Shown: in pieces, positions 1 through 59,383 of the stretch
Position numbering within the stretch: the first letter of the stretch is position 1
Layout of the letters: every line of letters begins with the position of its first letter
From: Trichoplax adhaerens
Lineage: Eukaryota; Animalia; Placozoa
DNA length: 64,000 nt
NCBI RefSeq assembly: GCF_000150275.1
Contig: NW_002060943.1
Span: forward strand, 4,980,008-5,044,007
Direction of reading: 5' to 3'
Translations under genes and position numbers: made by a program
Notes under the pieces: generated by a model
Told to the model about the DNA's origin: nothing
What the model saw: the letters and a program-made list of their open reading frames with translations, nothing else
Databases searched by the model: none

Positions 1-2581
1 TTATATAATTATTTATTTACGAAATAGGTCGTAATATTCTCACGACGAAAGATTGGTGTTCTATGGCTAATGAAGCATCGTTTATAAAATGAAAGGAATC
101 ATGGCAATACAAGATTGTTACACTTTGTTGTCTATCGTAACAATAATTTAATAGTCCAGTAGGGCTTGAGTACTGAACAATCACGAGTCCAATATAGCTT
201 AAGTACCGAACTAACTTTATTATGCGTTAGGAGCCGTTATGTATAAGAGACAATTACCAGTAATGTGCAATAACGGACATACCATGAATGTTAACGACAA
301 TCTTATCTTATTCATAATAAGATAACAACTTATTTTCTTAGATATGCTATCTAGGACTTAATCGTCATCATTACAGAACAACTGCAGAAATATACTGAAT
401 AAACAGGCTTATTCAATATGATAGATCTTATCGATACTATGTCTACAACGACTGTATTATTTCGTAACAAAGATGCAGCGCAATAGAAAAGTTTCTTAGC
501 TTAAAAATTATCCAGTAACAAAACACCAATCAAAACTTTCAGTTCCGTTCTCAGCGTTTAAATATTGATCGCACATTTATGTATTATTAATCGCTGCATT
601 AAATTTTCTTTCATAGTTATCAAGATAAAATGCAATTAATGGCATGATAGTATCCAGCAAGGCGATTTACTACGATAAAAGCAAATAACAGAAAAGACTA
701 AGAATATAAGCAGGTAGGTAACTTATACAAGCTAATAACAGCCAACACTTCATCCTATCTCGATAGGTTCTACTCTTTAACTAAATCACACTGGATTGCA
801 CCGTATCAAATATCAGCAGCGGCATCTCATCCATTAAGTACATTTTTCATCTCCTACAAAGTAGATAAAATAATTTCTGAGCTTTAAATCACATTTAGTG
901 ATATAATACACTCCCAATTTCAGAACCATCCTAACTCAAACATCGAAAAACTGTAATTAAAATACTTTTCTGCCTTATAGTATCATAGCAACATCCCATA
1001 TACTATATGTTATATCTGCAATTACCATCATTTGTAATATAAAATAATTGTTAATTCACACTGCAATCAAACTTAAACTACCTCCAAGAAACATAGCAAT
1101 TTCTCTTATTTAAATTAATCATTAACTTCTTGCTATTCTGAAAAAAATTAATGTAATACACAAGCTAGCACCTCCTCGATACCATTACGTTCCCGAATTT
1201 ATTACGATCATTTAAAATTTAAATCCAGATAATCGTATATTTGATCTCCCAACTAATAAAACGACATATCATGAAGACAGCAATTTTTGTACATATATAA
1301 TAGCAGATAGTATTTAAACGTACCCTTGATGTCTACCGTAATCATTGTAAGGAGTTGATAGCTGCTGAATAGACAGGTTTTTTTGATAAAAGCACTGTAG
1401 AATATTAAGTAATATCCCATAATTTAACGTGTCATTGGATTATATTATGGCTTATATGAGTGAATAGGTTGACGGAAAAGACAAACAGAATTTAAATATA
1501 ATATCAATAAGAAACTGCAACTACATGCTGGATACTCATTGATGCAGAACAACTCGACTAATAATGCAACTTTTATCGTTTAATGCCCCTTTCATCCAGG
1601 AAGACGATCGATAAAAACAAAGTAAAGTGTTTTGAGTTTCATAATATTTACTATTGTAAAACCCATCAGGATCTTGGCTTACTTTTTGCTCCTCATCCAT
1701 AAATGAATAGTTACTATTAATAATTTATACACCAAAATATTACTGAACTTATATCCTTAATAGAAAACGAATCAATATCTATAAGAAACTGCGTTCATAA
1801 TATTAATCGTATAAACACATTTAGTGCGAATATTTTTCTTAAGTATTCCAATTATTTTGCTTAAAATCTCCCATGTTGTCAGTTAAGCAATTCAGTAAAG
1901 TTTTTGAAACTATATTTGTTAATGATAAACTCAAAATTAAAGAAACGTTATGTAATAGCTTCCACTATTACGCTAGGTCCTAAGTTTATGTCTTACGTAG
2001 AATGAGTCTAAGTTACAGCATGTACTCCAGTTGATCGTATCATCACGTGCCCGTTAATTTATTAGACTTAGGTAATCTTAGTATTATCGTTAATACGACT
2101 TAACGTCACTTTTCTACACGTGGCTAATCAATAGCAGCCGATAGTTATTGTTGCAACCACTTTTTGTAATATAGAAGCTGCTTCTAACAGCAGTTGAGTA
2201 TAGACACCAATCTTCGCTAAGATTAAGACTAGAACTCTCTTTATTTTAAAAGTAACTCGCTTTTATGCCTTCTATCTATTTACGAGCAAATATATATTCT
2301 TATATCTAATTTAGTATAACTTTAAGCTCTACTTTAAGATACGTTAAAATATGCACACAACATGAGATAAACCACTATCAGAATACGATCTGACCTTCGA
2401 GCTCTCTTATAAATTAGGTACCTAACTAATTACTAACAATCTATATGCCTGATTTCGCAAATTGCAGTTAACATATATAACATAACTCATCGCGATGCGA
2501 GTAGCGTGCCATTCACTTTTACTAAAATTCCAGCCAGAGGATCGAAATTTAGAATTAGAGACGATATAATGCATCTACATT

Positions 2582-2910
2582 AGATAGAGAAGACCTGGAC
2601 CCCCGCGAAAAATAATAACAAAAAGATAATAAAAGGAAATAAAAAATGAAACACTAAAAATCGGATATATACGCCGCTCGAGCGCAAAGAAATATATATA
2701 TCGTNNNNNNNNNNNNNNNNNNNNNNNNNNNNNNNNNNNNNNNNNNNNNNNNNNGCATAAATCTATATAGAAAATTTCAGAGTCGAAACGATATATATAT
2801 TTCTTTGCGCTCGCGCGGCGTATATATCCGATTTTTAGTGTTTCATTTTTTATTTCCTTTTATTATCTTTTTGTTATTATTTTTCGCGGGGGTCCAGGTC
2901 TTCTCTATCT
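2582..2910. mobile_element. TIR transposon insertion with 6-bp TSD, Polinton/Maverick-like termini; interior not assembled
   Basis: 2582-2704 is the reverse complement of 2788-2910 (123 bp, one mismatch). Termini are AGATAGAGAAGACC...GGTCTTCTCTATCT. TACATT is directly repeated at 2576-2581 and 2911-2916. A 50-N gap (2705-2754) lies between the arms. Superfamily assignment rests on termini and TSD length only. Confidence 0.8.
2705..2754. other. assembly gap (50 N)
   Basis: Run of 50 N; a fixed placeholder length, so the true size is unknown. Confidence 1.
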
Positions 2911-3758
2911 TACATTATCGTTACTATTATCGCATTTATATTCAAGTGAAAAAGTAAACTGACTAGCCAATAATGACAATCTCATATTACGTTAGTTGTG
3001 GTTCTTCATACGAGGTATCTATACTAAGGGTTGGTAGTCTGAATGTACTTCGAAAGCTTGTCCTTCTTAATAAACTGAAAACGTTTGCTAAACCCATACT
3101 AAGGCTTAGCATTCTTTTTCAATCGTGAAGTAATTCCTTTCGCTTTATGTTAGTTTCCTACTACCATAAGCTAGGTTAACGACCAATTAGATTTTGCACC
3201 AGTACCCTTTATGTAAAATTTGTCTCATACTGGACTGTGATGGGAGACACATGTCCTCTTCATTTGGATCTATCATCTATCAACCACAGTTTTTTTCCCC
3301 TTGCAATGATTTAGATGGGCAATTAAATCATAGTTGCTATCTCTGCAGCCTTTCTATCTACAAGATCCTGCGATAAATTAGGAGAAGAATTCAAAATTCA
3401 AAATCCGCATAATCTCTCTTCGATACGGTGTTGCCTTGTCATTAGGATAGTTTAATAAGTACAGTTGTAGCTAGTATGGAGAATTGTTACAGTGTTACAT
3501 ACTGTATTAGAGTAGAAATATCTATGTTAGGATAATTCTGTTAGACTATTCTTATTTAGTTAACTTCTAATTTGGATATACTGTGTTTTAATATAGCACT
3601 GACTTTTTATGATAATGACACTTATACACATACTGAAATTAATAGTTATAGTAGGGAATACAAATCATCTACTTACAGTTCGATTCATTGCGATTGTAAT
3701 TTACTTATGGTAGATTGTAAATTATCGTGGAAATGTTCCGTGATAGGACATATCGTAA

Positions 3759-4114
3759 TCTGACTATTCTGTATTAGTCATTACATATCTATGTTCGTAA
3801 ATACTGTTGTCTGCATTAAGGAAGCAGTAGCTAAAATTAATATCTAATTCAGAAAACGATTCCAATGTTAATTGTATTAACTATGCTCATGAAGTATTGA
3901 GGAATAGTATATAAATGCAGTATATCGTAAAATAAAGAGAATTCTCAAACTTAGTATTTAACGTAAAATACGAGGCGTTTAAGTCTTTGTGTAGTCTACT
4001 AGTAGAGCAAAAGTGTTTGTGATAGTGCAGATATCGTTCCTTGATACGTGGTTCAAGGAATTGACTTATTGATCGTATATTACGTTATCTTGTTGCAAAG
4101 CTGTTTTGTGACAA
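3759..4114 (+). repeat. dispersed ~355-bp repeat, copy A
   Basis: Reverse complement of 15715-16070 at roughly 90-95% identity by eye. Contains the hairpin TTCCTTGA-N8-TCAAGGAA (4037-4060) and the palindrome TCTACTAGTAGA. Confidence 0.92.
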
Positions 4115-7892: not shown

Positions 7893-7942
7893 NNNNNNNN
7901 NNNNNNNNNNNNNNNNNNNNNNNNNNNNNNNNNNNNNNNNNN
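7893..7942. other. assembly gap (50 N)
   Basis: Run of 50 N. The flanks are near-identical (CAAAACACCCATT / CAAAACCCATT), which suggests overlapping contig ends. Confidence 1.
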
Positions 7943-10482: not shown

Positions 10483-11613
10483 ATGTCTACCAACAACACA
10501 ACTACTGATTTACCATGGTATCGAGCTTATACTTTGCACAGCTATATCACTATGGGCATTATTGGAAGTTTATCCGTTATCACTAATTGTATTATGACCT
10601 TATTAATCGCCTATCACAAAAAACTAAGGACTAGAACTAATATCATCATACTTAGTATGTCATTATCCAATATTGGACTTGCCATATTATTTATCTATCC
10701 ACAATACGTTGTTCCATATTGGCCAGAACGATTAGGACCTTATTGCAATGTCCTTGAACAAATAGGTTCCTTATTTATTGCCAGTACAAGTTTTCATCAC
10801 TGTGCAGTATCTATCGACCGTGCATTCGCCATTAATTTTCCCATAAAATATGGCTTATATTCTAAACATCTTCATACGACAATTCTGTTGTGTTCCGTTT
10901 GGTTGTGCGCATTGCTTTTAGGATTTATGCCTATATTCATATTACGACGAATTACTGACAATGCTTGCATTAACCCGAAATATGTCAGTTTAATCGATCT
11001 ATACCTTTATTATAGAGTATTTTGGGGTATAGTCCTTTTCTGCCCGGTATTAATTACCATTGCATGCTATACTGACATTTTATATAACATCAATTCACCT
11101 ATCCGAAGACAAGTTTACTTCTGTAATTCAAGGATATCCAAGACTAAACTAATGCAAAATTTGAAGACAACATTACAGATGGCCATTATGATAGGTGCCT
11201 TCATTGTAACTTGGTCTCCCTTCATCATCATGCATTTTTACATTAGCTTTAATAAATCTCAAGATATAACGAGAGACTTATTGATACTTGAAATTTTACG
11301 ATTTGTTGCTTTTAGTTATATAATATTCTGCCCGATTCTACATGGTCACTACCTTAGAATGATACGAGAGACATGGTTAAGAGTAATTCGCTGTCGTCAG
11401 AATAAAATTGAAGGTGGTCATACCAGCAGCTTTGCACAAAGCCAAAGTGGTATAGTAACTTATAGTCTACGTTCAACTAGATCAGACGCTAGAATATATG
11501 CTGGTCTTAAGGCTAAATCTGACTCTCAAAAAGATCCAAAGTTCGGTTCCATCTCCAGCACAAACTTACTTAATAAATCAGATTCAAAACAAGAAGATAA
11601 GCCAGTAGATTAA
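10483..11613 (+). CDS. class A (rhodopsin-like) GPCR, orphan, 376 aa, single coding exon
   Basis: Seven hydrophobic segments; N-terminal N-glycosylation sequons (NNTT); ICL1 'KKLRTRTN'; C3.25; TM3 'SIDRA' followed by 'FPIKY'; TM4 W; TM5 'FCP...CY'; TM6 'FIVTWSPF'; TM7 'FCPILH'; Ser/Thr-rich C-tail. The first ATG is at 10483 (the ORF track starts at an upstream GTG). Confidence 0.93.
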   Translation: MSTNNTTTDLPWYRAYTLHSYITMGIIGSLSVITNCIMTLLIAYHKKLRTRTNIIILSMSLSNIGLAILFIYPQYVVPYWPERLGPYCNVLEQIGSLFIASTSFHHCAVSIDRAFAINFPIKYGLYSKHLHTTILLCSVWLCALLLGFMPIFILRRITDNACINPKYVSLIDLYLYYRVFWGIVLFCPVLITIACYTDILYNINSPIRRQVYFCNSRISKTKLMQNLKTTLQMAIMIGAFIVTWSPFIIMHFYISFNKSQDITRDLLILEILRFVAFSYIIFCPILHGHYLRMIRETWLRVIRCRQNKIEGGHTSSFAQSQSGIVTYSLRSTRSDARIYAGLKAKSDSQKDPKFGSISSTNLLNKSDSKQEDKPVD

Positions 11614-15714: not shown

Positions 15715-16070
15715 TTGTCACAAAACAGCTTTGCAACAAGATAACGTAATGTACGATCAATAAATCAATTCCTTGAACCACGTATCAAGGAACGATATCT
15801 GCACTATCACAAACACTTTTGCTCTACTAGTAGACTACACAAAGACTTAAACGCCTCGTAATTTACGTTAACTCTAAGTCTACGAATCCACTTTATTACA
15901 CGATATACTGCATTTATATACTATTCCTCAATAGTTCATGAGTCATAGTTAATACAATTAACCTCGGAATCATTTTCTGAATTAGATATTAATTTTAGCT
16001 ACTGCTTCCTTAATGCAGACAACAATATTTACGAACATAGACATCTGATGACTAATACAGAATAGTTAGA
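15715..16070 (-). repeat. dispersed ~355-bp repeat, copy B (inverted relative to copy A)
   Basis: Reverse complement of 3759-4114, including the TTCCTTGA/TCAAGGAA hairpin at 15769-15792. Confidence 0.92.
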
Positions 16071-16868
16071 CTATAGTGTCAGAAATTATTACTCAGCAAA
16101 TTTACTGTCAGGTTTGCTCTTCCAACAAGTACATAAAGTACAATTCTATATAGTGACGATCTCTCTACAGCCAGAAGGTTACAGTAAATTTTATATTGTC
16201 TACCGCTGCTTAGTAAATAGTTCGGTAGCGAAATAGGTCAATACATTTTATAAACATTTTTTTGATAAACTCTTGATGCAGCGGATACTCAAGAAATTAG
16301 AACAATCCTCACAGTTTGTATGAATGTAATTGCTCTAATAATATTCATAACACATGATCGATTAGGAATTTACAGTCTATTATACGAAATATTGTTTTAC
16401 GTTCATAATTGGAAACATTGTGAATAATTAAATCATTCGAATTTTGCCTTAATTATTAGCTTTTTACACCAGTAGTGATTGATGAGCATGCTAATTTCAT
16501 TTTTTTATATCATTCTCAGAGAAAGTTCCTCAGAGAAAAAGTTTATAAACACTAGCATTACCAGTACGTCTGAATGGCTTTGCGAATTTTCATTTACCTT
16601 GAAGACGTGGTTCAAAACTATGTCTTATCTATGAGTATAGCCTTTTATGTAATCAGTAATTTTACGAAATGTACGATTAGTAATCTACCGGTACTCATGC
16701 AAATCAAGCATGCATAGCGCGCTACTCTGGAATGACAGATGGAAATGTTACTCGATATCCTAAAATTTCTTAATAATATAAATCAAAATCTAATGTGACA
16801 ACTAAACGTAGATTTACGATTCCAACGTTGTTCTATTTATAGCAGATGTGACAACAAATTACTGGTGT

Positions 16869-25567: not shown

Positions 25568-28500
25568 ATGGCATCTACAAGCAACACTGGTGAATTAGAT
25601 ATAAATGTGCGTCGCACGGAAATATCTGATGCTACAAAGATTATGCAATTATTTAACTCCTCGACTGAAAAAATTTTTGGCCGCGTTAATGTCGTTCACT
25701 TGATGTAAGTATAATATGAGTAGATGTAGTATCCTGCTTAGCTTACACAATATCTTGATTCTTCTATTTCTAGAGAAAAATCAGTTCTTTCTATCACTAT
25801 TACGGATGATCAAGAAACAATGATTGGACAAGCCTCTTTTTATGATTATCCTAATATTCAGTCACACGTAGTCGAAAGATGGGAAGACTTAATAATCTCC
25901 AACCCAAAACTGGCACACTGCTCGGTAATTAAGTCTATACTTAAGTTACAAGATAGCAATTTACTTACCTCGAATAACATCTTGATTCATATTATCAATT
26001 TTACTCCTTTAGCCTCTAAATACTTTATTCCTTCATCATTTCGTCGCCCTTGAAGGCTACGCTAAAGGAGTAGCAAAAGAGATTTTTAAGTAAGTATTGA
26101 GCTCTTCCAGAATTTTAATTTTATTGATCACTTGTATAGATCAAGAGTCATTAAACCATTTATCTATCTCTTTTTATTCCATCAACATCGTAGGACATTC
26201 TTTAATGCGACACCTTACGTTCACTACTGTTTGTTGAGCGTTAAGAAAGGCACAGCTATGGGTAACTCAGCTATTCTATTAAAATCTTATGCTTGAAAAT
26301 TTGTGCTAAAATTGAAGCTGTATTAAATCACATAATCACAATAGGCGATTCCTTAAATGAAATTTTTTCGCCGACTGGATTTATCTCAAAGTTGGAGGGA
26401 AGTGAATACGAGATATTAATTTGTCACCGTCATGACCATTGCCCAACTTTACATATACGCCCTGCAAAGTACGAAATATACGGGAGACAATTTCTCGAAT
26501 GAATGATTAAATACATATGATTACAAACGCCGTAATTATTTTATCGTACTTTAATAAATTAGGGTCGAAGATCATGATGACTTAGTACCCATATTTAATC
26601 GGCAGAGTGAAGTTCTAAAAGAAACTTATGGTAAATTTCCTACCAATCCTAAATCCGTTATTATTATCAATCATTTGATGCTATACTGTACAGTATATTA
26701 TTTGGAAAATTAACTTAATGCCGCTATTGTTATTACGTACAATCCAATAGGTGATTATTTTCTAGCGGAGTTAATAGAAGCTCAAAATGAAAATAACAAG
26801 TGCATCGTAGTAGACGTAAGATCGAAAAAATAAGTATTATGAATAAAAGATAGTTATCAATGTATTATAAGACCTATTAAGTATGTCATTGTTAATCACT
26901 TAGGTTAAGGGAACTGCAGTTGGGTTTATGAGTCTGAGTAAAAACGTTAATATAGATATATTAACGTCATGCTTTGAGCTATCGCCATTTAATGGTTTGA
27001 GAAGACCTCCTGAATTTAGTAACGCTGAAAATGACGATGGAAAGCAAGCATCTGAAACCGAAGAGCCAACTGATACACCTGCTAAGACATCAAGGTATTG
27101 CGACCGATATATATGAAGGAAATATAATCTTGCTGGAATATGATTTCTAACTTAAGATTTGATAAATACTAAACTATATTTATTTTAATATCATGGATTG
27201 AACAGAGTTACATCGATCATTCAAACCGACGGTAGATATTGAATTATTATCATATCTAGACCTACAGTATATTGCTCATTAACTCATTTAATGTTTAAAT
27301 GTTTTTTTTATCGCAATGATCAAAACTTGTCAAAAAATCAGACCATGATTCCAAAAAGGACGATAGGAAGCATTCCACTAAAGGGTAAGTTAATTTTAAT
27401 TACTAACTGTTCAAATTTATAAACCTATAAAGAAATACCGCCACCTGTATTTGTTTCATAATGTAACATCTATTAAATGACTTTCAGACTCCATGATATC
27501 TTTTCACGTCCACCAACTAGAGGTTTGTATTTTTATGTAGTGTAAGACATGAACTAGACGATACTGCTGAATAGCAAATCTGAAACTAAAGAAAAGTATG
27601 ATCTATCTAATCTATAGGAAGTACTATAACTATTGGAACAGATACTAGTGACGTACACTTTAAATCAAAACTTGCTGATGTTTATGACGACGATGACGGG
27701 TAAATGTGTTAATAAAGCAATATAGCTTAATCTCGCTTATTTTATCAATCTTAACATTATTTTATATCTCAATACTCCTTTCTAACGGATATAAAATTAC
27801 GATACAAATTTATAGAAGTTCTTTTGATGGCAGTGAGGAATTCTCTGAGCACAGTGGCTCAGAATCAGTCCAGGTACATAAATATTTCTAGAAAATTGTG
27901 TTTTCGAATCACTAACTTCGGCATGAAAAATGCCTTTAAATTTTAGTCACTAAGATCACGGAATGATATGGAAGCTCAAGCTCTGGTGAGTTAAAAAATA
28001 TATCTGTAATTATTAAGCACTATACACTAAATCTATTATCCTTAAAGAGTTTGACACATTCTTTGTTAATACATATACGCTAGCAATCAATGCACGGAAA
28101 ATTTAAAATACTTTTTATTACAGGATATAAAAGGAATTGATCGCGCATCTAGTGCACCAGTCTATCAAGGAACTCCGTCCGTTATTTGCATTCAATTATA
28201 TTGTATAGACGAAAAGTATGAAACAAGGTAAGTCGATTATTAAAGGGTAGTATATAACGGCATTTAATTATAATCACTAATGACTGAAATTGAATATAAA
28301 AACAGATCACTAGACTTCATTACAGCGGCTTTTGATTTCTTCCCGGTATGTACCCTTAATTTAAAATTTTTATCCTGCTATTTGATATCTAATTTGACAA
28401 AATTAATAATTTTATGGACTAGAATGTCGATTATTGCGTCATCACTGTACCACATTTGGTTCCGGAATTTCCTTTACTGCAACATTTCACGGTAAGCTAG

Positions 28501-31500
28501 GAACAGTAATTTAGAAAGCAAATTGTAGAAATGGCTGATTTCTAAATATTTTACGCAGAGAGTAACTCCTAAGCCTAGAAGTACCTTTCCTCAAGAACTC
28601 TATCTTTTTCATCACTATGGTTTAATCAAGTAAATAGTAAATCACAGCATTTGAAATGATGTAAAAGTCCGTGATCTAACGTTCATCTACTTTATTGTTT
28701 AGCTCCATGAAAGTCAGAAACGTAAAAGTCGAAGATGTTGAAACTATTTCTAAACTTGTACAAAACACAACAGGCAAAGACATGCTATTAAGGTATTAAA
28801 ATACCGTGCACATTCATGAAATGATCTTGTTAATTCCCACTAATCTTCCATCAATCTGATCACTTTCTAATAGGGACATTAATTTATACAACATGGCTCG
28901 CCGCGATCCGGTGAGTTGACAACCTTTATCTTTAACATCAAAATATTAAAATATTGCCTTAAAATTTATTATACTGATTTGATCCTAAGTATTTGGTAGA
29001 ACGACTTATAATGACTTAATAGATTTTAGCAAAATTTCCAAAATTGTTTATTTTAAAACCATTAAACACAAGCCTTGAATAATGTTAAATAAATAAATTT
29101 AACTATATTACCAGGATGGAACAGACATCAAAGCCTATGTTGCTGTCTGTCTAAATCAACCTGTAGGTGTTGCAGTTATTAGAAAGGAAGAGGTAAAGAT
29201 TTATATGATATTAAAAATAAATGGCGAGTTGTAATGCAAATGTTAGCTAAATTCAATGCTAATGACGCTTTCCAATTTCATATTACTTTCAGAACATAGA
29301 GTATATTCGATCCCACTACAACATCGAAGATTTTATTTATTATAATCATTATATGAGGGAGGAACACGGCCACTTACATCATTTCGTCTTGAATCCCATC
29401 TACTCCCACTTTTCCAAATACTTTATTCAGGTAATAATCATCTACAGGTTAAGAAATTTATAAGCAGTTGCAGATCAATACTGGTAATCAAAAATTACTT
29501 AATAATTTTTATGGGGTATACATTTCAACTGGAACTTTAAGATTGAAAAGCTACGATACTTCGCGAATAATTATCGAGACAGAGAAAAGTAAATCTTAAC
29601 CTTGATATTCTCTCTATTAATTAGGAAATTTTGCGATTATCGAAGAAGAATGCTATTTATTACCCGATATATCCACCGTATGTTCAGTTAAACGAAACCA
29701 AGCCTCATTCATTAGCATCATGTTTAGCTAACATGGTGCCCATTAGGTATGGAGGATGAAAACTGCTTTTACCTTGTATTCATATTCTATCAGCATTTGA
29801 TACCGTAACCATGAATGACTTTGTCTAATTAGGGCTCGAAGACAAGTTCAATACGTAGTCGATGAATTAAAGCATAACGCTCCGTCTAATCGAATTTTGC
29901 AACAAATGGTAATCAAGACCAAGATGCAATTACAATGTTAACATTAGTTTGGTCTAATGAAACAATATTAAATTAATTAAATCCTTTGTTATTATATCGC
30001 AGGATAACTACATGTTGTTTCACATTAATAAGAAGTTGGTCATGGAACCAAAGATTACGATTAATGCCAGAATCATCGTTGTTGGAGCATCTGATGTGGG
30101 TGTATCTTTCCTGGAAAAACTTATTTTTAGGTACTGTAGTATAGGCTAATATCCATAGAACTCAAACTTTTAGCCCAGCTTCTTTTAAAATGCAATAGAA
30201 CGATCCTTGAATATTTTATTTAGCCCCCACATGAGATTTAACAATCTCAAACTGATCAGCCCTAATGGCATTCCAGGCCAACTAAAACCTAATTCGTTAA
30301 GGAATCAATTTTTAGCTGACAGGTAAGATATATGAGTAATAGCCACGTATTTAATATTAATAAAGATCTACAAATATATATATAAAATTGATGAGTTTAA
30401 ATGGCTTAATCTGATTTAGCTACTGTTATACGCAACAAAACTACGACCAGATCGCTTTACATTCATGGGTTAGCGTTATAAAAGGAGAGGTCAAAGCCAT
30501 AAATAGGTTAAAAATCAGCAAAGATGAATACTATTCAGTTCTAACTATACATTTATCTTGTAAACATTTAAGTGCTGCACTGCTCAATCTACTTAATTAA
30601 ACCTTAACAAATTTGCAGTATAATACTGAAGTAAGTTTATTATTCTTAATTACAATCAATCTTATATTAGGAAAAGTAAATATGTGGTGGTAGGAAACGA
30701 TACGAAAGTCATGTATGATCATTTAATCTTGTGTACTGGCTGCCGCTACCAATATTCATGCCCTACTGGTGTTAATGTCGATGAGAATGTCGTAAACAAC
30801 GAAACTACTGTACCTTATCGATATTTCGGACCAAAATATAGCAATATTTTCACATTAAATGATCAGTTCGATTGTCAAGCATTTCTTGATTGGTTAGAAG
30901 AACAAGACTTTATCAATCGTCGAGGTATATTTTACTTAGGTTGCTATAGCTATTAAATAATTTTTTATCTGCATAATATTAATTGAGCTATATTAATAAT
31001 ACTCGTAAATATCAGTAGAGATAGGTATCAATTACGTCTTGTTCACTCTATTAGCTCATAGTTACAATGCTTTAAAACTCATAATTAGGCAATTTTTCCA
31101 TTTGCACTTATAGGTAATGTTAACTCAGCCTTCTTAATACTCGTAAAAATTAGTAGAGATAGGTATCAAGTACATCTATCTAATTCAACTAATTAGTTCA
31201 TGGCTACAGTACTTTGAAACTTCATAATTGCATAATACAATTATCAAACATTAATTAATATAAGGAGCTAGATGATTCTAGAGACGATTGTTATATTAAA
31301 ACTATATCATATTGCCAAATTTATTTCAAAGCAATTATAATTCGTTAGCCAATAAACGAGTCTTATAAATTGTCTAAATAACACCAATAGTGGTACAGCT
31401 TCCCTTTTGCTATGGTATCATAGAGTTAAACTTGTTATTATTATGTAATTATTTATGATTTAATATTACACGATATTTAATGTGGACGATGCATGCAGTA

Positions 31501-33781
31501 ATGAATAATTCCTTTTCTATTTAGATCACGTATGCATTTACGGCAGCACTATTGATGCTTATACCACAGTCCAAGCTTTACTAGAATACGGAATCGAAGG
31601 CTCAAGAATTATTCTAATTCATCCGCCGGCAGCATCTCCTATAAATTGTTTCAATAACAGTATAGTAGAAGAAGTAGTTTTAAAAGGATTGAAAGAAGCT
31701 GGTAAATATAGGACATAATTTAGTTATAAAATGCTGTAGCAATTCGATAATCTACTTGAGATTATGAGAACATCTCGTTCTAAAATTTGGATATCTTTTT
31801 CATACTTCATAAGGCATCACAGTACATCATGACTTGATATTGGCTAGATGGGAAATTGATGAATCTAACGAAACAGTGGTTGGCGCTAGTTTTACTTCTG
31901 ATAATAAACCAGTCCAAATCTCATGTTCGGCTTTCATTTGCTTTAGCAAACTTGGCATTGACTACTCTATTTTTAAAGGTTTTTATTTCATCTTATTGAA
32001 TCTTTACAACCAACTATAGTGCAGATAATTCTTGAATTTAAATTCAAAAGACTCACCATTATGCCTAATGATAATCAATTCTTATCTACGTTACTAGCTA
32101 TCAACGATTCATGCTTGGTCTACGATGGGAGATTAGTCATTGATTCTAGCTATCGAACAAATGATCCTTGCATTTGGGCCGCTGGACCAATGACCAAGTT
32201 TGCACGCAGATATCATGCAGAGGCTTGGACTCATGCTAATTTTAATTCTAAAGAAGTTGGACTCAAGGTTGAAATAGCAAATCTAATCGCCTTTTTCAAT
32301 ATATGATTAACTGATTTAGCGAAATTAGCGAATACGGATCGCTATATCTTATTCTTTATTGCATTATATTCTTACCCTTTCTTTGCTAGTTGGCTGAAAC
32401 CGTTCTAAGCATATTAGACCCTATGCTTGAATCAGAAGCTCCAGATGCACAACCTGATATTATCCCGGTATATAACCATCCGAAGACATTCCTTACGAAA
32501 CTACCAGGTAGCTTAATCTATTAATTGAATTGTCAAAGTTTTAAAAGTACAAATTCCGCCATACTATAACAAAAATTCATGGCAAATTCTGTATTTAAAT
32601 TATTTGATACCCTGAAGTAATGGAAACTTTTAAGATCTAGCAGTGGATGGATGATATATAACCAATATATTTGTTTTAAAATCTTAAACAGGAAATTACA
32701 CATATCTTCATACTGGTAAACCTTCCCTAAATATATCTCTCGATTCAATGATGGTCCAACCAAATTACGTAAGTTAAAGACTTTAGAAGAATCACAAATA
32801 GCTTTTGTTATCTTATACCAAATAATTAAAGCTAGGAATATATAACTTCATCTTAGGGCCATGTATTAGTCACTGGTAGCCATACAGTGGATACTCAAGG
32901 GTATTTTAGACTGCATATAAATCAATATCGATCAGTAGAAACTGTAACCTGTTTGAGCAAAAATGTAAGCTACTCTGTGGATAGAACATGCTACACTGCA
33001 TAAAAACATGATTAAAATAGCCTAAATCATCCTTAAGTAATGGTAAAATAATCTTGTAATTCCTTTTTTATAATAGGAAATTAAAGTAAATAACCTGCTA
33101 TCACTTTATGGTATTCATGAAAAGTTTCTTAATAACGTTCTATCACGTTATAAAGAAGGCCTTGTTTCCGACTTTTATCAGTAAGGAGTAGAACCTGTTA
33201 TAACAACTTACATTTATCTCCTCAACAATAGTATAAAGAACATGGCGCTAAATTAAGCTTTAAAATATTACAAGTTTAGATAATAATTCCTTGTTATTAT
33301 ATTGAAAGGTACTTCAATGAACCGTGGGCTACAGCAATCTTTCATGACCGCTTTCATGATTTCCGTGAAGAAATCAAAGAAATCCTATTTAATAAACAGG
33401 TAGACTTATTTATTCGAGCTAAATAATCTAGTAGTGGGCTATAAACTGCAATTTCCAGAATGAAATAACAGAATCTTTAAATAATAATTTCTTCTTAGGT
33501 TGAAGAAGAATCGGACGAAACATTTGAACTGAAAATACGCAAACTATTGGACGAAGATTTTACTGTAAGTTATCTTCTCTATAACTAGAATAAATTTAGT
33601 TTTTAACATTAAATTTCACCGTTCGGTTCCCTTTCTTTCGCAGTTTACCAAAAAAGAACTACAACAACTTGGTGAAGATTATATTAAAAGTTGCAAGAGT
33701 TCAACAGAGAAGCGCTTATTAACATATTTAAGTTATAACACCTATCACTTGCCCATGTATGCGAAACCAGGAATAGTTTAA
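25568..33781 (+). CDS. CFAP61: cilia- and flagella-associated protein 61, ~38 exons
   Basis: ATG at 25568 (MASTSNTGELDINVRRTE...). The spliced frame stays open through 38 GT-AG exons to TAA at 33779-33781. Recognised motifs: QASFYDYPN, PLNTLFLH, ICHRHDHCPTLHIRPAKVEDHDDLVPIF, ETYGDYFLAELIEAQ, YIRSHYNIEDFIYY, EPKITINARIIVVGASDVG (Rossmann-like), YDHLILCTG, AINDSCLVYDGRLVID, IWAAGPMTKFARRY and C-terminal YHLPMYAKPGIV. It accounts for the ORF-track fragments at 25820, 26293, 26928, 27706, 28280, 30684, 31834 and 32019. Confidence 0.95.
30997..31229 (+). repeat. intronic direct duplication (~90-bp core x2) in CFAP61
   Basis: TAATACTCGTAAA..AGTAGAGATAGGTATCAA...CATAATT at about 30997 and about 31136, inside the longest CFAP61 intron. 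Confidence 0.8.
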
Positions 33782-35938: not shown

Positions 35939-38900
35939 TTAACCTTCTTTATCGGTTCGAACTTGCTCTAATTCAGTTTCATTAGCTGGAGCAACCGATG
36001 ATTTCCTGATTTCGTCCCATCGCATTTCGATGAAAAACATGTACATACCACCACCAACAATAGCTCCGAGTATAGGTCCGACAATGGGCACCCAGAACCA
36101 ATAATTTCCATTACTAAACATCATCACACGGGTAGAAATGAAGAATATATTATATTATTCCTTTTCGCTTTATACTGTAGTTTAATCAATATGATACAGA
36201 GTGAAAGATATCGAAACTAACATATAGTTTTATCAAAGAAACGAAGTACTGCAAGGTTATCATCTCACTTATATTGTTTTACGCCAATATTTATCTAACA
36301 TTGAACAAGTAATAACTGCAAATAAAATATAATTTTATCGGAGAAAAGAATACTGCAAGATTATCATTTCACTCATATTACTTTACGCCTATATTTATCT
36401 CTTATTGAGTAGATAATTGTTATCAATCAAATGCTATTCGGTGAGAACGTAAAAATGCTACAAGCTCATCATCTCGTTAGTATTTACTGTACGACATAGA
36501 TGCAGCTTTAAAAAGGGATAATTGATTACTAGTAGCTATTGCTAAATTTTGATAGTGCACGAAGTAAAGAGGTTAGGGTTAGGGTTTGCAAATATGAATA
36601 CCATTTTCTTTACCCTATTTTAAGACTAACTTAGATATAAATCCGAATTAAGCGTATTTAACTACTAGTATATAATAGAGTGCATATAAGCTTGTATGTT
36701 TGCTTAGCTTATGCATTTGCTGCTAACTTCGCAGAAGCAATAAGCGTTGATTACAAACAAATTAAAGAATCCAATTATAGTAACAATCCAGTGGTATACA
36801 ATCAAAACTATTCAATATTTTAGGTTTAAGGCATATATGAAAATCATAAACTTACACAAAAGTGGGTGTACCCCAACCAGCAATTAAAGTCCACAATCGT
36901 GGTGCAAAATCACGAGCAGGATTGATGGCATAACCACAATTTAAGCCAAAAGTATCGCCAATGTTCAAAACAACAAAGCCAATAAGTAAAGGCTTCAAGT
37001 AATCTGGAGGAGCCCAGTTTTTATCATCAACCAATGCAAAGACACATAGAGCTAATAGGCCGGTACCAACAATCTAAATAGAATAATTACAATTAGACAG
37101 AATTACTCCAAAAAACCAGCAGAATGATAACTGCTTGAGTCTTATTACTCATATAAAATTGTCAAATTAAACTCAGTTTCTATTGTAATCTAAATATACC
37201 AGAACTAATCCTGGCCATAAGTAAAATATGATAAAATGTTATCTCTCTAGAGTATTCATAGTTTAATCATTGCTACAGCCTTAAAAAAGATCTATAGCCA
37301 AAGAAGAATAAAAGCTTTAAGCCATAAATTTGCACTCTGGAAATAATCTCTTACACCAATCTGTGTAAGAGACTTAAGGCCATTTACTAAATATTGCAAC
37401 ACTATAGCTGATGCCCCACTGTAATACTATTGTATAAGATATTGTCGAGAAACAAGACCTTATACAACGTTAAAATTTGTAAGATTGTCATAATACGTGG
37501 TAGAAACTCATCACTTTGATTATGTTCACATTAAACTATGTAAATTTCGACTTCATCAGCTAAAACGAACCTGATCGAAAAATCCTGCAGCAGTACTCAA
37601 ATAGGGTTGTGGATATGTTGCCCAGATCTGAGCGGTAGCATTAACATGGGGTGGCGTTTGGCGAACTCCACCATCATAAGCATTAATACCCTCTGTATAA
37701 AACAATTGAATAAAATTAATTATTAACGGTAAATATCCATCTCTAATACAACAGAATCGATTATAGATCCGCAGATCGAATTTCCGTTAAGGATAGCTGA
37801 ACGCTGGCTAAACTATCACACGACTAGAAATCGATAAATTGTGCGTAAAAATTTGCTTAAACTATTCTTCAAATGAAATAATTAAATTTATCGCTAATTA
37901 CCGATATAGATGGCATGGCAAACCGCTGATGCAATGAATGAGCCCAACATTTGAGCTGTAATGTACATCGGAACTTTTCTCCAAGGAAACTTCTTGTAGA
38001 CAGCTAAAGCAATAGTCATAGCTGGATTCATATGAGCACCAGTTACATTACCAGCTACATAACAACCAAATGTTACACCCAAGCCCCAACCAAAATTAAT
38101 GGACAAAAAGTCACCGAAATTGCCCTTTCCTAAAACCACTTGAGCCACAGAGCCAATACCAAAAGTCTTAAATAAATTAAAAATTATTACTTGAATCAGT
38201 TGATATCACATTATCAATTCCACATCTTTTCATAGGTCAAAATCGTATTTTCTGTAATGTAAAAACACGTGTATCACATTTTAACTATTAAGTTCACCAA
38301 ATTAAAGTTATATAGCAATTCACTAGTAAATGAAAATACTTTTAATCATATATGCGTATTTATGTAATCATTCATTTTTCCTGGTTAGCACACAAGCAAG
38401 TATACGGCCAGCTATTGATATTAAAACTGTACGCAAAATTAATTTCATATATTCTTTTACTCGCTATAGACTACACGTAATTCCAGTTATATTAACGCTA
38501 AATAAACGTTTCTATAACAGGAAATCAACATCGCATAGGGATTTATTCTGAAAAAACACCTGCGTAAGGCAGAGCTTTTTCCAACTTTACTAGCGTTATC
38601 CGCAAAATAAATAATAAGAAATAATTCATTCGATATATTGATAAGCTGATTATGCAATCATCTCTAGCTCCAAAGCAAATAAATGCTCAGATAGCAAAAC
38701 TAAAAATTTCGCAACTATGTATTTAAAAATTGGTTTCCTTATATAATTTGGCTAACTCTAGCTAACGTCGTCACAGTTTGTCAATATTCATTAGTTAGTT
38801 CTACAATAATATTGATAAATAGCAAGCCTTACACGCCTTGTATATCACGTAGCAACACCTAAATTTATTTACATATAGGTACTGACTCGAATACAGTAAT

Positions 38901-55043: not shown

Positions 55044-57195
55044 GAGTATACACTCCTTTTAAATTAGTCGTCATGATCAGTTAGACTAGCCTTAGCCTGT
55101 ATAGAAATTCATCCATATTGTGATGTAATAAATAATACGATCATTGCACCAGTAATTGCAATCATCGTAAAGCAGTTTATTGACGACAACAATTGGAAAT
55201 ATCTTGAATTTAGTGATGCAGCTTATAAGAATCATTATGACTAGGATAAGCAGCTTATGAACAATAAACTACCTAAACTGGTTTAAAAATAGTTTTACCT
55301 AAGCTACATAATATTGTAGCCAATTTTAATATTGTGGATTTCTTTTTGTTAATATTTAGTTAATCTACAGTCAGTCAGAACAATTAGTTTGGGACTAATT
55401 TCAAGCATGAAGACAACAAATTTTCCCTTATTTTCGCAAGAGCCTATGTAACTCAATACTTAATAACGAAGTATCGGCTTAAATCTCTACAATTCACACA
55501 AGCAGTATTATACTGTAGTTAGTATTAATCGTTCTAAATGTTATTTTAGTAGTTTATTTTGACCATTTCCATATTTTACTACCCCTTTCTCACTTATTAC
55601 GTTAAAGGTCATAAAATTTAGATTTAACGTCTTGAAACTTTACCGCCCATTCCAGTGATCGATATAATCATGCAATACCAATCAAGTTATTGTCAAGAAA
55701 AATTGACCACCGTCGATCGAAAAAAGTAGAATAGTCATCAAGAGAGAAAAATAAGATGAAACAAGACTTTTATTGCTTTGCAAAACAAAAAAAACAAAAA
55801 AGTTTTCCTCCTGACCTCTGTCTCAGCCATGTTGAATTTTTCCTTAATTTCAAATCGATGTACTTTGCCCACTAATAGTAGCTTACAAGACAGGAATACA
55901 AGAATGATTTAATCGCTAAGGTTAACCCCTATAAGTTATTGCACCTGCTGCTGATTTGAACACATAGGTGGGAAATAATTCTACAATAAGTTCGTTCGAT
56001 ATATTTAAAATTAGATAGCCAATAGCATTCCACGTTATTCCACTCTTGTTGACAAAATTAACTAGGCAGCCATGCACAGAATTGTTATGATAACAATGAA
56101 ACATCTGTAGCATTTGGCAATATCCAATGCACGCATAAAGGAGAAAATAAATAGCGTCTCAAACGATTCAAGGTAGTAAAAAGACTCAAAGCCAATACAA
56201 TCAAAATTTCTCAAATAGTAATCATTCAGGTATTGAGACACCATATGTAAATATTTTCTAGATTTTTTGCAGATATGACTGCGCCTAGGACTCCTTTACA
56301 AGAAAGGATCAATCAGGAATTATGTTACATTTTGTTTCTATACGAAATTGCGTACCTAAACTGATGATATTCCTAAATCTTTTGAGTCTAGCCCAGTTCA
56401 TCCCTTCAATTCTAAAATATTCGACTCTAGTGAATTTGAACTTTACGTACATGGACGACTAGACGGCATAGCTGATTTTTTACTACTCGATAATATTATT
56501 ATTAAGCAATATGGTACGTAGTAAAAATTTAAAACATTTTAACCAGGTGGCTGATGTTCAATGAAATGCCATACAGTAGATATACTAGGAATATCATCGA
56601 AGACTATTCAACATGGCATCGAATTATATACAACTAAGCTCTTAATGGATAGGCATGGTTTAGATTAATTATCAACTTTTTCAGCCAAAAGTCAGATAGT
56701 AAAAAAGTTCTTAAGTAATTGATAGAAAATTAAATTAACCATTTCCACCTTGTGCTATAAATTACGCCCGCGTGAGCTGAGGATCCAATTTAATGGCACC
56801 AAGTCATAATGACATAGTAAAGCAGTTATAATTACATTTAGATACTTCATAATTGCATTAAGAGCCAATTCTGACTAATCAAATGACAAAATAGATTCAA
56901 GGAAATTACATTATACGCTATTTTATTACATTCTTAGGTCTACCTCCTTGTTACAATACTGTAGCGTTTAAAATTTTCAAAACTGTTGCTAAATCTATAC
57001 GTAATGGGTATTACTTTCCAATATTGCAAATAACATTTTTAAATATTAAAATCTTAATCTATTCTTGGTTAATCAATCTGTAAAGAAATAAATTATGATC
57101 GACCACATCCCTTTGCACAAACAGTAAAAAATTTATTTGTTTGTATAAGCAGCATTTATGAATTAATCATTAGATCAATAATATAATTTAAGACT

Positions 57196-57722
57196 ATAGT
57201 ATCAACTATTCTGGTAACTAAATCTATTTAGTAGCTGTTTAGCAAAGCGAATAAAAATATCCTATAAAATGTCTACTTAATGCATGGTACAAACATTTCA
57301 ATTCTACAGAAAGTGAGACTTCCATAGCAAAATGCTCTGTGCCATGAGAATTTCCTTTGACAGTTTAATATCGGTGAAAATAAGCCTCTAATATTCATGT
57401 AATTGTAAGCCGTATAAAAAAGCTACCAAAACAAAAATCTAAAGTAATCTATCCATAGATTTATAGTATCAACTAATCAGGTGACTAGAGCAATTTCGTA
57501 GCTGTTTAACTAAGCAAAAAAATCGTAAAATGTCAACTTAAACACGGAGTGCAAAGATTCCAATTGTACAGAAAATGGGACTTTAATAGTAAAATACTTT
57601 ATACCAGTAGAATTTCCCTTGTTAGTTTAATCTCTGCAGGAATAAAATCTCTAATATCTATCTAAATTGTAAACCTGATAAAAAGCTACCAAAATAAAAA
57701 AAATGGAATGTAACCTACTATA
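57196..57722 (+). repeat. diverged tandem duplication, ~266-bp unit x2
   Basis: TATAGTATCAACTA at 57196 and 57462. Shared blocks include GTAGCTGTTTA, TAAAATGTC.ACTTAA, AGAATTTCC and ATAAAAAGCTACCAAAA. Confidence 0.88.
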
Positions 57723-59076: not shown

Positions 59077-59383
59077 AGTTAAAATAGCTAAACTATGGAT
59101 AATAAATAGTATTATTAATTATCACTCAAGATTAAATTATCTCTATTCATAGTTCAATCATTGAAATCTAATTTTCAATAAGATAAGGGGGATAAGATAA
59201 TCTATCTACAGTATACAGTACAGAGCTTTTGATAAATAGTTAAAATAGCTAAACTATGGATAATAATTAGTATTATTAATTATCACTCAAGATTAAATTA
59301 TCTCTATTCGTAGTTAAATCATTGAAATCTAATTTTTCAATAAGATGATCTATCTACAGTATAGAGAGCTTTTAATAAATAGT
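59077..59383 (+). repeat. recent tandem duplication, ~160-bp unit x2
   Basis: AGTTAAAATAGCTAAACTATGGATAATAA...AGAGCTTTT.ATAAATAGT occurs twice with only a few substitutions and two small indels. Confidence 0.93.

What the first reader, a model, noticed from the sequence alone, without database searches (positions are those of the whole stretch)
2576..2916. Probable Polinton/Maverick (virus-like transposon) insertion whose body is hidden in an assembly gap
Seen: inverted arms of at least 123 bp (2582-2704 and 2788-2910) with one mismatch; termini 5'-AGATAGAGAAGA...TCTTCTCTATCT-3'; an exact 6-bp direct repeat TACATT on both sides; GC-rich sub-terminal blocks (GGACCCCCGCG, CGCCGCTCGAGCGC) in otherwise AT-rich DNA; and a 50-N gap between the arms. 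Established: 6-bp TSDs, long TIRs and AG...CT ends with short AG-rich terminal repeats characterise Polinton/Maverick elements. These are typically 15-20 kb and encode a protein-primed DNA polymerase B, a retroviral-like integrase, a packaging ATPase, a cysteine protease and jelly-roll capsid proteins. Inference: the intact TSD and near-identical arms indicate a recent insertion. The gap may hide a full endogenous virus-like element that collapsed because it is multicopy or heterozygous, or a short non-autonomous derivative. No coding sequence is visible, so the superfamily call rests on the termini alone.
Basis: partly seen in the sequence, partly recalled or inferred. Interest (0 to 1): 0.85.

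Follow-up and report, generated by a model that had tools for sequence, protein, structure and literature searches.

The report
Small palindromic transposon, not hidden virus
A real, young-looking mobile-DNA insertion with long mirror-image ends sits at 2582-2910 in what is almost certainly the placozoan Trichoplax adhaerens. The unread stretch in its middle is most likely short, so it is probably a small gene-less transposon rather than a hidden 15-20 kb virus-like element.

Summary
Inverted arms of 123 nt (2582-2704 and 2788-2910) differ at one base. Their outer ends are sharp, 5'-AG...CT-3', and an exact 6-bp duplication (TACATT) flanks them. A 50-N gap cuts the left arm. This is a genuine transposon insertion, not chance or a misjoin.

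The host is almost surely Trichoplax adhaerens, from its Sanger shotgun reference assembly.

The idea that the gap hides a full Polinton/Maverick is disfavoured, for three reasons:
- N runs in this assembly are sized, not fixed at 50.
- The window's other 50-N gap has contig ends that repeat each other, so 50 N is also written where little or nothing is missing.
- The contigs enter the element by only 123 and 156 nt, far less than one Sanger read. That points to an obstacle at the centre of a short palindrome.

Best reading (about 0.55): a non-coding, largely palindromic TIR element of about 0.3-0.7 kb.

Among the described superfamilies I checked, only Polinton/Maverick matches the 6-bp duplication, long arms and AG...CT ends. 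No gene or second copy was seen, so membership is unproven.

I left out pattern scans of public collections with the termini. Interest is modest.

The parts
2576..2581 (.). left copy of the 6-bp target-site duplication, TACATT
   Evidence: only n=6 gives matching flanks; chance 5.7e-4
2582..2910 (.). the whole element as assembled (329 positions, 50 of them N); true length unknown
2582..2704 (+). left terminal inverted repeat, cut at its inner end by the gap (at least 123 nt)
   Evidence: (pair I1)
2582..2607 (+). 26-nt terminal block: AG-initial, purine-rich end followed by the outer GC-rich block (2597-2607); mirrored at 2885-2910
   Evidence: only two matches in the window, 0.00 expected
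2610..2659 (+). degenerate A-rich tandem unit of 11-13 nt, about 3-4 copies, inside the arm; mirrored at 2833-2882. Possible sub-terminal protein-binding repeats (inference)
2672..2685 (+). inner GC-rich block, holding the only arm-to-arm mismatch; mirrored at 2807-2820
2705..2754 (.). assembly gap (50 N) at or near the centre of the palindrome; true length unknown, probably short
   Evidence: PMC6879607; PMC6057997
2755..2787 (+). 33 nt of internal sequence on the right contig with no partner on the left; either unique centre or a continuation of the arm whose partner lies in the gap
   Evidence: no other copy in the window
2788..2910 (-). right terminal inverted repeat
2911..2916 (.). right copy of the 6-bp target-site duplication, TACATT

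Best explanation
The feature is one genuine insertion of a short, non-coding DNA transposon made almost entirely of its two inverted arms (a MITE-like or foldback-like element). Its true length is probably about 0.3-0.7 kb. It sits in intergenic DNA about 7.6 kb upstream of an intronless GPCR gene, in what is almost certainly Trichoplax adhaerens.

How it got there (inferred): a DDE-type enzyme supplied in trans bound the two identical ends and joined them to target DNA cut with a 6-bp stagger. Repair of the stagger produced the TACATT duplication. The best candidate enzyme among described families is a Polinton/Maverick-type retroviral-like integrase, because only that superfamily combines 6-bp duplications, long TIRs and AG...CT ends.

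Why there is a gap (inferred): the gap is not a hidden virus body. It is the unsequenced centre of the palindrome. Long palindromes are unstable in E. coli clones and stop Sanger reads (my own knowledge), so contigs built from both flanks end near the centre.

Shown: the arms, the ends, the duplication, the absence of any coding sequence, and the behaviour of the other 50-N gap in this window.
Inferred: the element's size, the enzyme family, the mode of mobilisation and the age.
For: - The arms, sharp ends and unambiguous 6-bp duplication are confirmed.
- Host identity: the window's GPCR shares a 90% cluster with RDD45030.1 of Trichoplax sp. H2 and lies on a 13.26-Mb sequence.
- The Trichoplax reference assembly is Sanger shotgun and carries N runs of other lengths, for example 400 N on scaffold_1380 (PMC6879607).
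- The reference holds 10.8 Mb of N in 104.6 Mb (PMC6057997). At 50 N per gap that would mean one gap per 434 bp, against one per about 32 kb here. So 50 N is a sized or minimum value, not a universal placeholder.
- The second 50-N gap (7893-7942) has contig ends that repeat each other, so 50 N is also written where little or nothing is missing.
- The contigs enter the element by only 123 and 156 nt. With 600-700-nt reads at 4-8x coverage, the chance of that on both sides without an obstacle is 4e-3 to 9e-6. This is a simple model that assumes the Sanger assembly.
- Sub-terminal short tandem units lie inside the arms, as in many non-autonomous TIR elements.
- None of the 12 ORFs of 70 aa or more in the 64 kb has a transposase, integrase, polymerase or capsid domain.
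- The Trichoplax genome holds only degraded Polinton-like fragments (10 hits, 14.8 kb in all) and a few low-copy non-autonomous DNA transposons (PMC2871265). Its repeats are generally small (PMC6057997).
- Family features: Polinton 6-bp TSD, TIRs of 46-1,447 bp and AG-type end motifs (PMC8097293, PMC8969392, PMC10045372).
Against: - Nothing between the arms has been read, so the size is an inference from how the assembly behaves.
- If the insertion is heterozygous, clone pairs from the empty allele could have produced a small gap estimate whatever the real size.
- Polinton copies broken by assembly gaps have a precedent in the Anolis genome (PMC3014272).
- No second copy was seen, so repetitiveness, a defining trait of MITEs, is untested.
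- The published survey found only one MITE family and no active TE in this genome (PMC2871265). That fits poorly with a young-looking insertion and leaves the source of the enzyme open.
- The terminus is AG-initial but is not the perfect (AG)3 or (AGT)2 iteration reported for vertebrate Mavericks (PMC8097293).
- Near-identity of the two arms of a palindrome can be kept up by intramolecular repair, so it is a weak clock.
Confidence: 0.55

Rival explanations
1. One reading: a full or large Polinton/Maverick (many kilobases, with pPolB, integrase and capsid genes) lies between the arms. It is missing from the assembly because it is heterozygous or multicopy.
For: - The 6-bp duplication, long near-identical arms and AG...CT ends fit the superfamily (PMC8097293; PMC8969392).
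- Polinton-like protein fragments exist in this genome (PMC2871265).
- Polinton copies interrupted by assembly gaps are documented in Anolis (PMC3014272).
- A heterozygous insertion could make clone-pair gap estimates come out near zero.
Against: - N runs in this assembly are sized (PMC6879607; PMC6057997), and this one is at the same 50-N value as a gap whose contig ends repeat each other.
- Sanger reads anchored in the flanks should reach hundreds of bases into a non-palindromic insert, yet the contigs stop at 123 and 156 nt.
- The genome is extremely TE-poor with no intact element reported (PMC2871265; PMC6057997). A multicopy collapse is therefore unlikely, and a single-copy 15-kb insert should have assembled.
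- No viral or transposase domain appears anywhere in the window.
Confidence: 0.12
2. A short TIR element of a different or still undescribed cut-and-paste superfamily that happens to make 6-bp duplications. It would be unrelated to Polinton-type integrases, for example an atypical member of Mutator, P or hAT, or an unclassified placozoan family.
For: - Most repeats in Trichoplax are unclassified (PMC6057997).
- TIR elements annotated as Mutator are frequent in placozoan promoters (PMC12221973).
- The superfamily call here rests on termini and duplication length alone.
- The terminal motif does not match the published vertebrate Maverick end motifs exactly (PMC8097293).
Against: - The superfamilies I checked in papers that make 6-bp duplications fail other tests: IS3EU/GingerRoot has TA..TA ends (PMC10045372); Dada has no TIRs and inserts into small-RNA genes (PMC3706591; searches find no RNA gene here).
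- Ginger1 and Ginger2, the main DNA transposons of Trichoplax, make 4-5-bp duplications with TGTNR ends (PMC2836005; PMC6057997).
- Mutator (9-10 bp) and hAT (8 bp) duplication lengths are from my own knowledge and do not fit.
Confidence: 0.25
3. An assembly artefact: a fold-back chimera, or two contigs that each end in the same repeat and were scaffolded head to head. No such insertion would exist in the genome.
For: - The two arms lie on two different contigs joined only by a scaffold gap.
- No read-level data could be examined.
Against: - A misjoin would not give an exact 6-bp direct repeat abutting both sharp ends (p about 5.7e-4).
- A fold-back chimera would put both arms on one contig, and the arms would copy neighbouring host sequence. 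They do not.
- The flanks continue as ordinary unique DNA on both sides.
Confidence: 0.04

Closest known systems
Polinton/Maverick virus-like self-synthesising transposons
   Same: 6-bp target-site duplication. Long TIRs: at least 123 nt here, against 46-1,447 nt in vertebrate elements (PMC8097293). 5'-AG...CT-3' ends with a purine-rich terminus. Degraded protein fragments of the superfamily are present in the same genome (PMC2871265).
   Different: No pPolB, integrase, ATPase, protease or capsid gene is visible. The apparent size is hundreds of bases, not 12-25 kb. The terminus is not the perfect (AG)3 or (AGT)2 iteration. No second copy is known.
MITEs and foldback-like non-autonomous TIR elements
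   Same: Small, non-coding and AT-rich. The arms make up most of the element. Short tandem units lie inside the arms. There is a clean target-site duplication. Mobilisation would be in trans.
   Different: Copy number is unknown (one copy in 64 kb). A 6-bp duplication is not what the common MITE-source superfamilies make (my own knowledge: TA, TWA, 8 bp, 9-10 bp). Only one MITE family was reported for this genome (PMC2871265), and I could not compare it.
IS3EU/GingerRoot
   Same: 6-bp duplications made by an integrase-related DDE enzyme; present in animals (PMC10045372).
   Different: Complete families end in TA..TA, occasionally TG..CA. This element ends in AG..CT.
Ginger1 and Ginger2/TDD, the main classified DNA transposons of Trichoplax (PMC6057997)
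   Same: Integrase-related enzyme; TIRs of 40-270 bp (PMC2836005).
   Different: 4-bp or 4-5-bp duplications and TGTNR termini. Neither is met here.
Placozoan TIR elements annotated as Mutator, linked to promoter hubs (PMC12221973)
   Same: Same host lineage; TIR elements whose arms carry a sequence motif.
   Different: The duplication length expected for Mutator is 9-10 bp (my own knowledge) against 6 bp here. The element is not at a recognisable promoter. The published motif is shown only in a figure, so it could not be compared.

Membership tests
Polinton/Maverick | 6-bp target-site duplication | tested here: met
   TACATT on both sides; only n=6 fits; p = 5.7e-4
Polinton/Maverick | long terminal inverted repeats (tens to more than 1,000 bp) | tested here: met
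   at least 123 nt, 122 of 123 identical
Polinton/Maverick | AG-type iterated end motif, such as (AG)3//(CT)3 or (AGT)2//(ACT)2 (PMC8097293) | tested here: inconclusive
   The ends are AG...CT and purine-rich (AGA three times in the first 12 nt), but there is no perfect terminal iteration. The published motifs are from vertebrates only.
Polinton/Maverick | [quoted passage not shown] | not testable with these tools
   The interior is unread. No such domain is found in any ORF of 70 aa or more in the window.
Polinton/Maverick | retroviral-like (rve) integrase gene | not testable with these tools
   The interior is unread; none is found in the window's ORFs.
Polinton/Maverick | capsid, packaging ATPase and protease genes | not testable with these tools
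   The interior is unread; none is found in the window's ORFs.
Polinton/Maverick | length of about 12-25 kb (autonomous members) | tested here: inconclusive
   Indirect evidence points to a short interior: sized N runs, the second gap's repeating contig ends and shallow contig penetration (PMC6879607; PMC6057997). The gap itself was not read.
Polinton/Maverick | further copies with the same termini and different 6-bp duplications | not tested
   No other copy is in the window.
MITE / non-autonomous TIR element | short, no coding capacity, TIRs plus a target-site duplication | tested here: inconclusive
   TIRs, the duplication and absence of coding sequence in the 279 read bases are met. Total length is unread.
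MITE / non-autonomous TIR element | multiple dispersed copies | not tested
IS3EU/GingerRoot | TA..TA (rarely TG..CA) termini with a 6-bp duplication | tested here: not met
   The ends are AG..CT, and shifting the boundary destroys both the inverted repeat and the duplication (PMC10045372).
Dada | no TIRs; insertion inside multicopy small-RNA genes; 6-7-bp duplication | tested here: not met
   Long TIRs are present. No Rfam family or tRNA is found anywhere in the window (PMC3706591).
Ginger1 / Ginger2 | 4-bp or 4-5-bp duplication and TGTNR termini | tested here: not met
   6-bp duplication and AG termini (PMC2836005).
Mutator-like (as annotated in placozoans) | 9-10-bp duplication (my own knowledge) and long TIRs | tested here: not met
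   Long TIRs are met, the duplication length is not. The placozoan TIR motif of PMC12221973 could not be compared.

The most novel reading that the evidence does not exclude
The insertion is heterozygous in the sequenced clone. The gap, sized from the empty allele, hides a complete and recently integrated Maverick/Polinton. It would be the first seemingly intact virus-like element in Placozoa, a phylum whose genomes are reported to have no active mobile elements.
Probability: 0.1. Interest if true: 0.6.

Novelty: new member of a known kind. Interest (0 to 1): 0.3.

Why it matters
Trichoplax genomes are described as nearly free of transposons and without active ones (PMC2871265; PMC6057997). 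An insertion with 122 of 123 identical arm positions and an intact duplication looks young. If other copies and an enzyme source exist, that picture would need a small correction.

If the ends really are Polinton-type, this would be a miniature derivative carrying only the ends of a virus-like element. Such derivatives are seldom described.

If it is simply an unclassified palindromic element, the finding is ordinary. Its main use would be as a worked example that a gap at the centre of a palindrome in a Sanger assembly need not hide anything large.

Tried and rejected
Tried, without result:
- The look-up of encoding contigs with the window's GPCR, to read the same locus in other assemblies. 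This blocked the best available test, the orthologous site in Trichoplax sp. H2.
- Other copies of the arm in the window: none at up to 3 mismatches or by low-stringency blastn.
- Rfam and tRNA scans: nothing, so no small-RNA target.
- Pfam on all 12 ORFs of 70 aa or more: only host genes, namely a GPCR, CFAP61 exons and an aquaporin exon.
- Full-text search for the 26-nt terminus: no paper.
- Kapitonov and Jurka 2006 is not held, so I cite its content through PMC8097293.
- Folding one arm plus the 33 internal bases alone: no structure of its own (z = +1.2).
- The TIR data of PMC12221973 are not among the held supplements.

Considered and rejected:
- Chance: rejected.
- Scaffold misjoin or fold-back chimera: the 6-bp duplication and sharp ends speak against it.
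- Local inverted duplication of host DNA: the arms match nothing nearby.
- Solo LTR: the arms are inverted, not direct, and the ends are not TG..CA.
- The neighbouring 360-nt inverted pair (3756-4114 and 15715-16073) as ends of one large element: it has no matching flank duplication and no similarity to this element.

Left out on purpose:
- Joining the two contig ends without the N run to fold the putative hairpin. Stringing segments of this region together is barred, so I did not do it.
- Any use of Polinton-like fragment sequences listed in the supplement of PMC2871265. One search printed one 219-nt fragment unasked; I did not copy, compare or use it.
- The prokaryotic genome-contig scan, as uninformative for an element inside animal DNA.
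Full report
1. THE OBSERVATION

The repeat finder reports arms at 2582-2704 and 2788-2910: 123 nt, 99% complementary. Aligning the left arm plus flank against the reverse complement of the right arm plus flank gives 122 of 123 identical arm positions. Similarity begins abruptly at AGATAG, and the flanks are unrelated in inverted orientation.

In direct orientation both flanks carry TACATT (2576-2581 and 2911-2916). Comparing the last n bases of the left flank with the first n of the right flank, only n=6 matches, apart from the trivial n=1. The duplication length is therefore not a matter of choice. With the window's base composition, a 6-bp match at a fixed place has probability 5.7e-4.

The 26-nt terminus occurs only at these two places in 64 kb, against 0.00 expected. 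The two GC-rich blocks are at 2597-2607 and 2672-2685, with mirrors at 2885-2895 and 2807-2820. The window averages about 31% GC. The gap is 2705-2754.

The gap truncates the left arm, so 123 nt is a lower bound. The right contig has 33 further internal bases (2755-2787) whose partner, if any, lies in the gap. TRF also finds a degenerate A-rich unit of 11-13 nt repeated 3-4 times inside each arm.

2. THE SURROUNDINGS AND THE HOST

The window is AT-rich, with CpG observed/expected of 0.93, and has no Rfam or tRNA hit. It holds only 12 ORFs of 70 aa or more. Those with Pfam hits are host genes:
- an intronless rhodopsin-family GPCR at 10483-11613 (7tm_1, E = 3e-23);
- exons matching CFAP61 at about 25.8 kb, with a weak Pyr_redox_2-like hit at about 32 kb;
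- an aquaporin exon at 37897-38148 on the minus strand.

No transposase, integrase, polymerase or capsid domain was found.

The GPCR is identical to a database protein seen on a 13,260,704-bp sequence. It shares a 90% cluster with RDD45030.1 of Trichoplax sp. H2. The window is therefore almost certainly from the Trichoplax adhaerens reference genome, so the host is an animal (Placozoa). That reference was made by Sanger shotgun sequencing (PMC6879607). Its later chromosome-level version only rescaffolded the existing sequence (PMC12221973).

3. IS IT A TRANSPOSON INSERTION?

Yes. Sharp inverted ends that directly abut an exact direct repeat of host sequence are the signature of a staggered-cut insertion. 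The alternatives fail:
- A head-to-head misjoin of two contigs ending in the same repeat would not give the 6-bp repeat (p about 5.7e-4).
- A fold-back chimera would put both arms on one contig.
- A local inverted duplication would copy neighbouring sequence, but the arms match nothing else in the window.

4. WHAT IS IN THE GAP?

(a) Gap lengths in this assembly are sized. Another scaffold has a 400-N gap (PMC6879607). The assembly holds 10.8 Mb of N in 104.6 Mb (PMC6057997). At 50 N per gap that would be one gap per 434 bp, whereas this window has one per about 32 kb. So 50 N is a small or minimum estimate, not a neutral placeholder.

(b) The window's other gap (7893-7942) is also exactly 50 N. 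Its two contig ends repeat each other over 11-13 nt with one 2-nt indel. So 50 N is also written where little or nothing is missing.

(c) The contigs enter the element by only 123 and 156 nt. In a simple model, reads of 600-700 nt start at random at 4-8x coverage and need 50 nt of unique anchor. The chance that no read carries the contig further on both sides is then 4e-3 to 9e-6. A symmetric obstacle is a better explanation. From my own knowledge, long palindromes are deleted or lost in E. coli clones and cause hard stops in dye-terminator reads. Both effects leave a hole at the centre.

(d) The genome is extremely poor in transposons. TEs make up 0.13% of it. There are ten degraded Polinton-like hits totalling 14.8 kb, and no intact element (PMC2871265). 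Repeats are mostly small, and only 12 ORFs pass transposase, integrase or RT profiles (PMC6057997). A multicopy collapse is therefore unlikely, and a single-copy 15-kb insert should have assembled.

Against this: if the insertion is heterozygous, clone pairs from the empty allele could force a near-zero estimate. Polinton copies broken by gaps have a precedent in Anolis (PMC3014272).

I put a short interior (element of about 0.3-0.7 kb) at roughly 0.8 overall. That is the sum of the best explanation (0.55) and the other-superfamily rival (0.25). I put a large virus-like body at about 0.1.

5. WHICH FAMILY?

A 6-bp duplication together with long TIRs is the textbook description of Polinton/Maverick (PMC8969392; PMC10045372). 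Vertebrate Mavericks have TIRs of 46-1,447 bp and end motifs (AGT)2//(ACT)2, (AG)3//(CT)3 or (AC)3A//T(GT)3 (PMC8097293). Here the ends are AG...CT and purine-rich, with AGA three times in the first 12 nt, but they are not a perfect terminal iteration.

The other candidates:
- IS3EU/GingerRoot: 6-bp duplication but TA..TA ends (PMC10045372). Not met.
- Dada: 6-7-bp duplication, but no TIRs and strict insertion into small-RNA genes (PMC3706591). Not met.
- Ginger1/2, the main classified DNA transposons in Trichoplax (PMC6057997): 4-5-bp duplications and TGTNR ends (PMC2836005). Not met.
- Mutator-annotated TIR elements common at placozoan promoters (PMC12221973): the expected 9-10-bp duplication (my own knowledge) is not met. 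Their motif is shown only in a figure, so it could not be compared.

So Polinton-type ends are the best match among the described superfamilies I checked. However, every gene-based defining feature is untestable here, and no second copy was seen. Curators assign non-autonomous elements by duplication length plus identity of terminal positions 1-11 to a classified element (PMC4455052). I could not run that comparison. I therefore do not file the element as a member.

6. MECHANISM

The following is inferred. The element carries no gene, so it must have been moved in trans. An enzyme recognised the two identical ends, possibly helped by the sub-terminal GC blocks and the A-rich repeats. It joined them to target DNA cut with a 6-bp stagger, and gap repair gave the TACATT duplication.

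A retroviral-like DDE integrase of the Polinton type is the leading candidate, because target cuts spaced 4-6 bp apart are characteristic of that enzyme class (PMC10045372).

The near-identity of the arms and the intact duplication suggest a recent event. But the arms of a palindrome can correct each other, so this clock is weak.

7. NOVELTY AND SCORE

This is a new member of a known kind: a small TIR transposon. Its modest interest lies in a young-looking insertion in a genome said to have no active elements, and in the possibility of a miniature element with Polinton-type ends. The most novel reading not excluded is a heterozygous, complete Maverick in Placozoa (probability about 0.1).

8. 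LIMITS AND STEPS LEFT OUT

The orthologous locus in Trichoplax sp. H2 was therefore not read, although it would probably settle the matter.
- I did not scan the viral or metagenome contig collections with the element's terminus. I could not tell whether the bar applies, so I left the step out and referred it.
- One search printed one 219-nt Polinton-like fragment from a paper's supplement without my asking for sequence. I made no use of it.
- The host identification rests on one protein cluster.
- The Sanger-based arguments depend on the window being the T. adhaerens reference assembly.

Noticed in passing
window 3756-4114 and 15715-16073: A second inverted pair of about 360 nt, 88-98% identical in blocks, 11.6 kb apart. 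It encloses the second gap and the intronless GPCR gene. There is no matching flank duplication for one large element and no similarity to the finding's arms. It is probably two copies of an unclassified interspersed repeat in opposite orientation.
   Followed up: partly
window 7893-7942 and its flanks: The second 50-N gap has contig ends that repeat each other over 11-13 nt with one 2-nt indel. Little or nothing appears to be missing although 50 N are written.
   Followed up: yes
window 10483-11613 (+): An intronless rhodopsin-family GPCR (Pfam 7tm_1). Its near-identical Trichoplax sp. H2 counterpart is named 'Octopamine receptor beta-2R'. The only other relative found was 57% identical, from a Logan assembly, which suggests a lineage-restricted receptor.
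   Followed up: partly
window about 25820-32306 (+) and 37897-38148 (-): Exons of host genes. One is a CFAP61-like gene (N-terminal domain hit, plus a weak Pyr_redox_2-like hit further on). The other is an aquaporin (MIP) exon on the opposite strand.
   Followed up: partly
window 1-64000: On the + strand, 24 of 32 2-kb bins have negative GC skew and 27 of 32 have positive AT skew. The cumulative GC skew ends at -1.80. The cause was not examined.
   Followed up: no
window 57195-57700 and 59077-59336: Local duplicated blocks: units 161-267 nt apart, 73-97% identical. They look like short tandem or segmental duplications in non-coding DNA.
   Followed up: no
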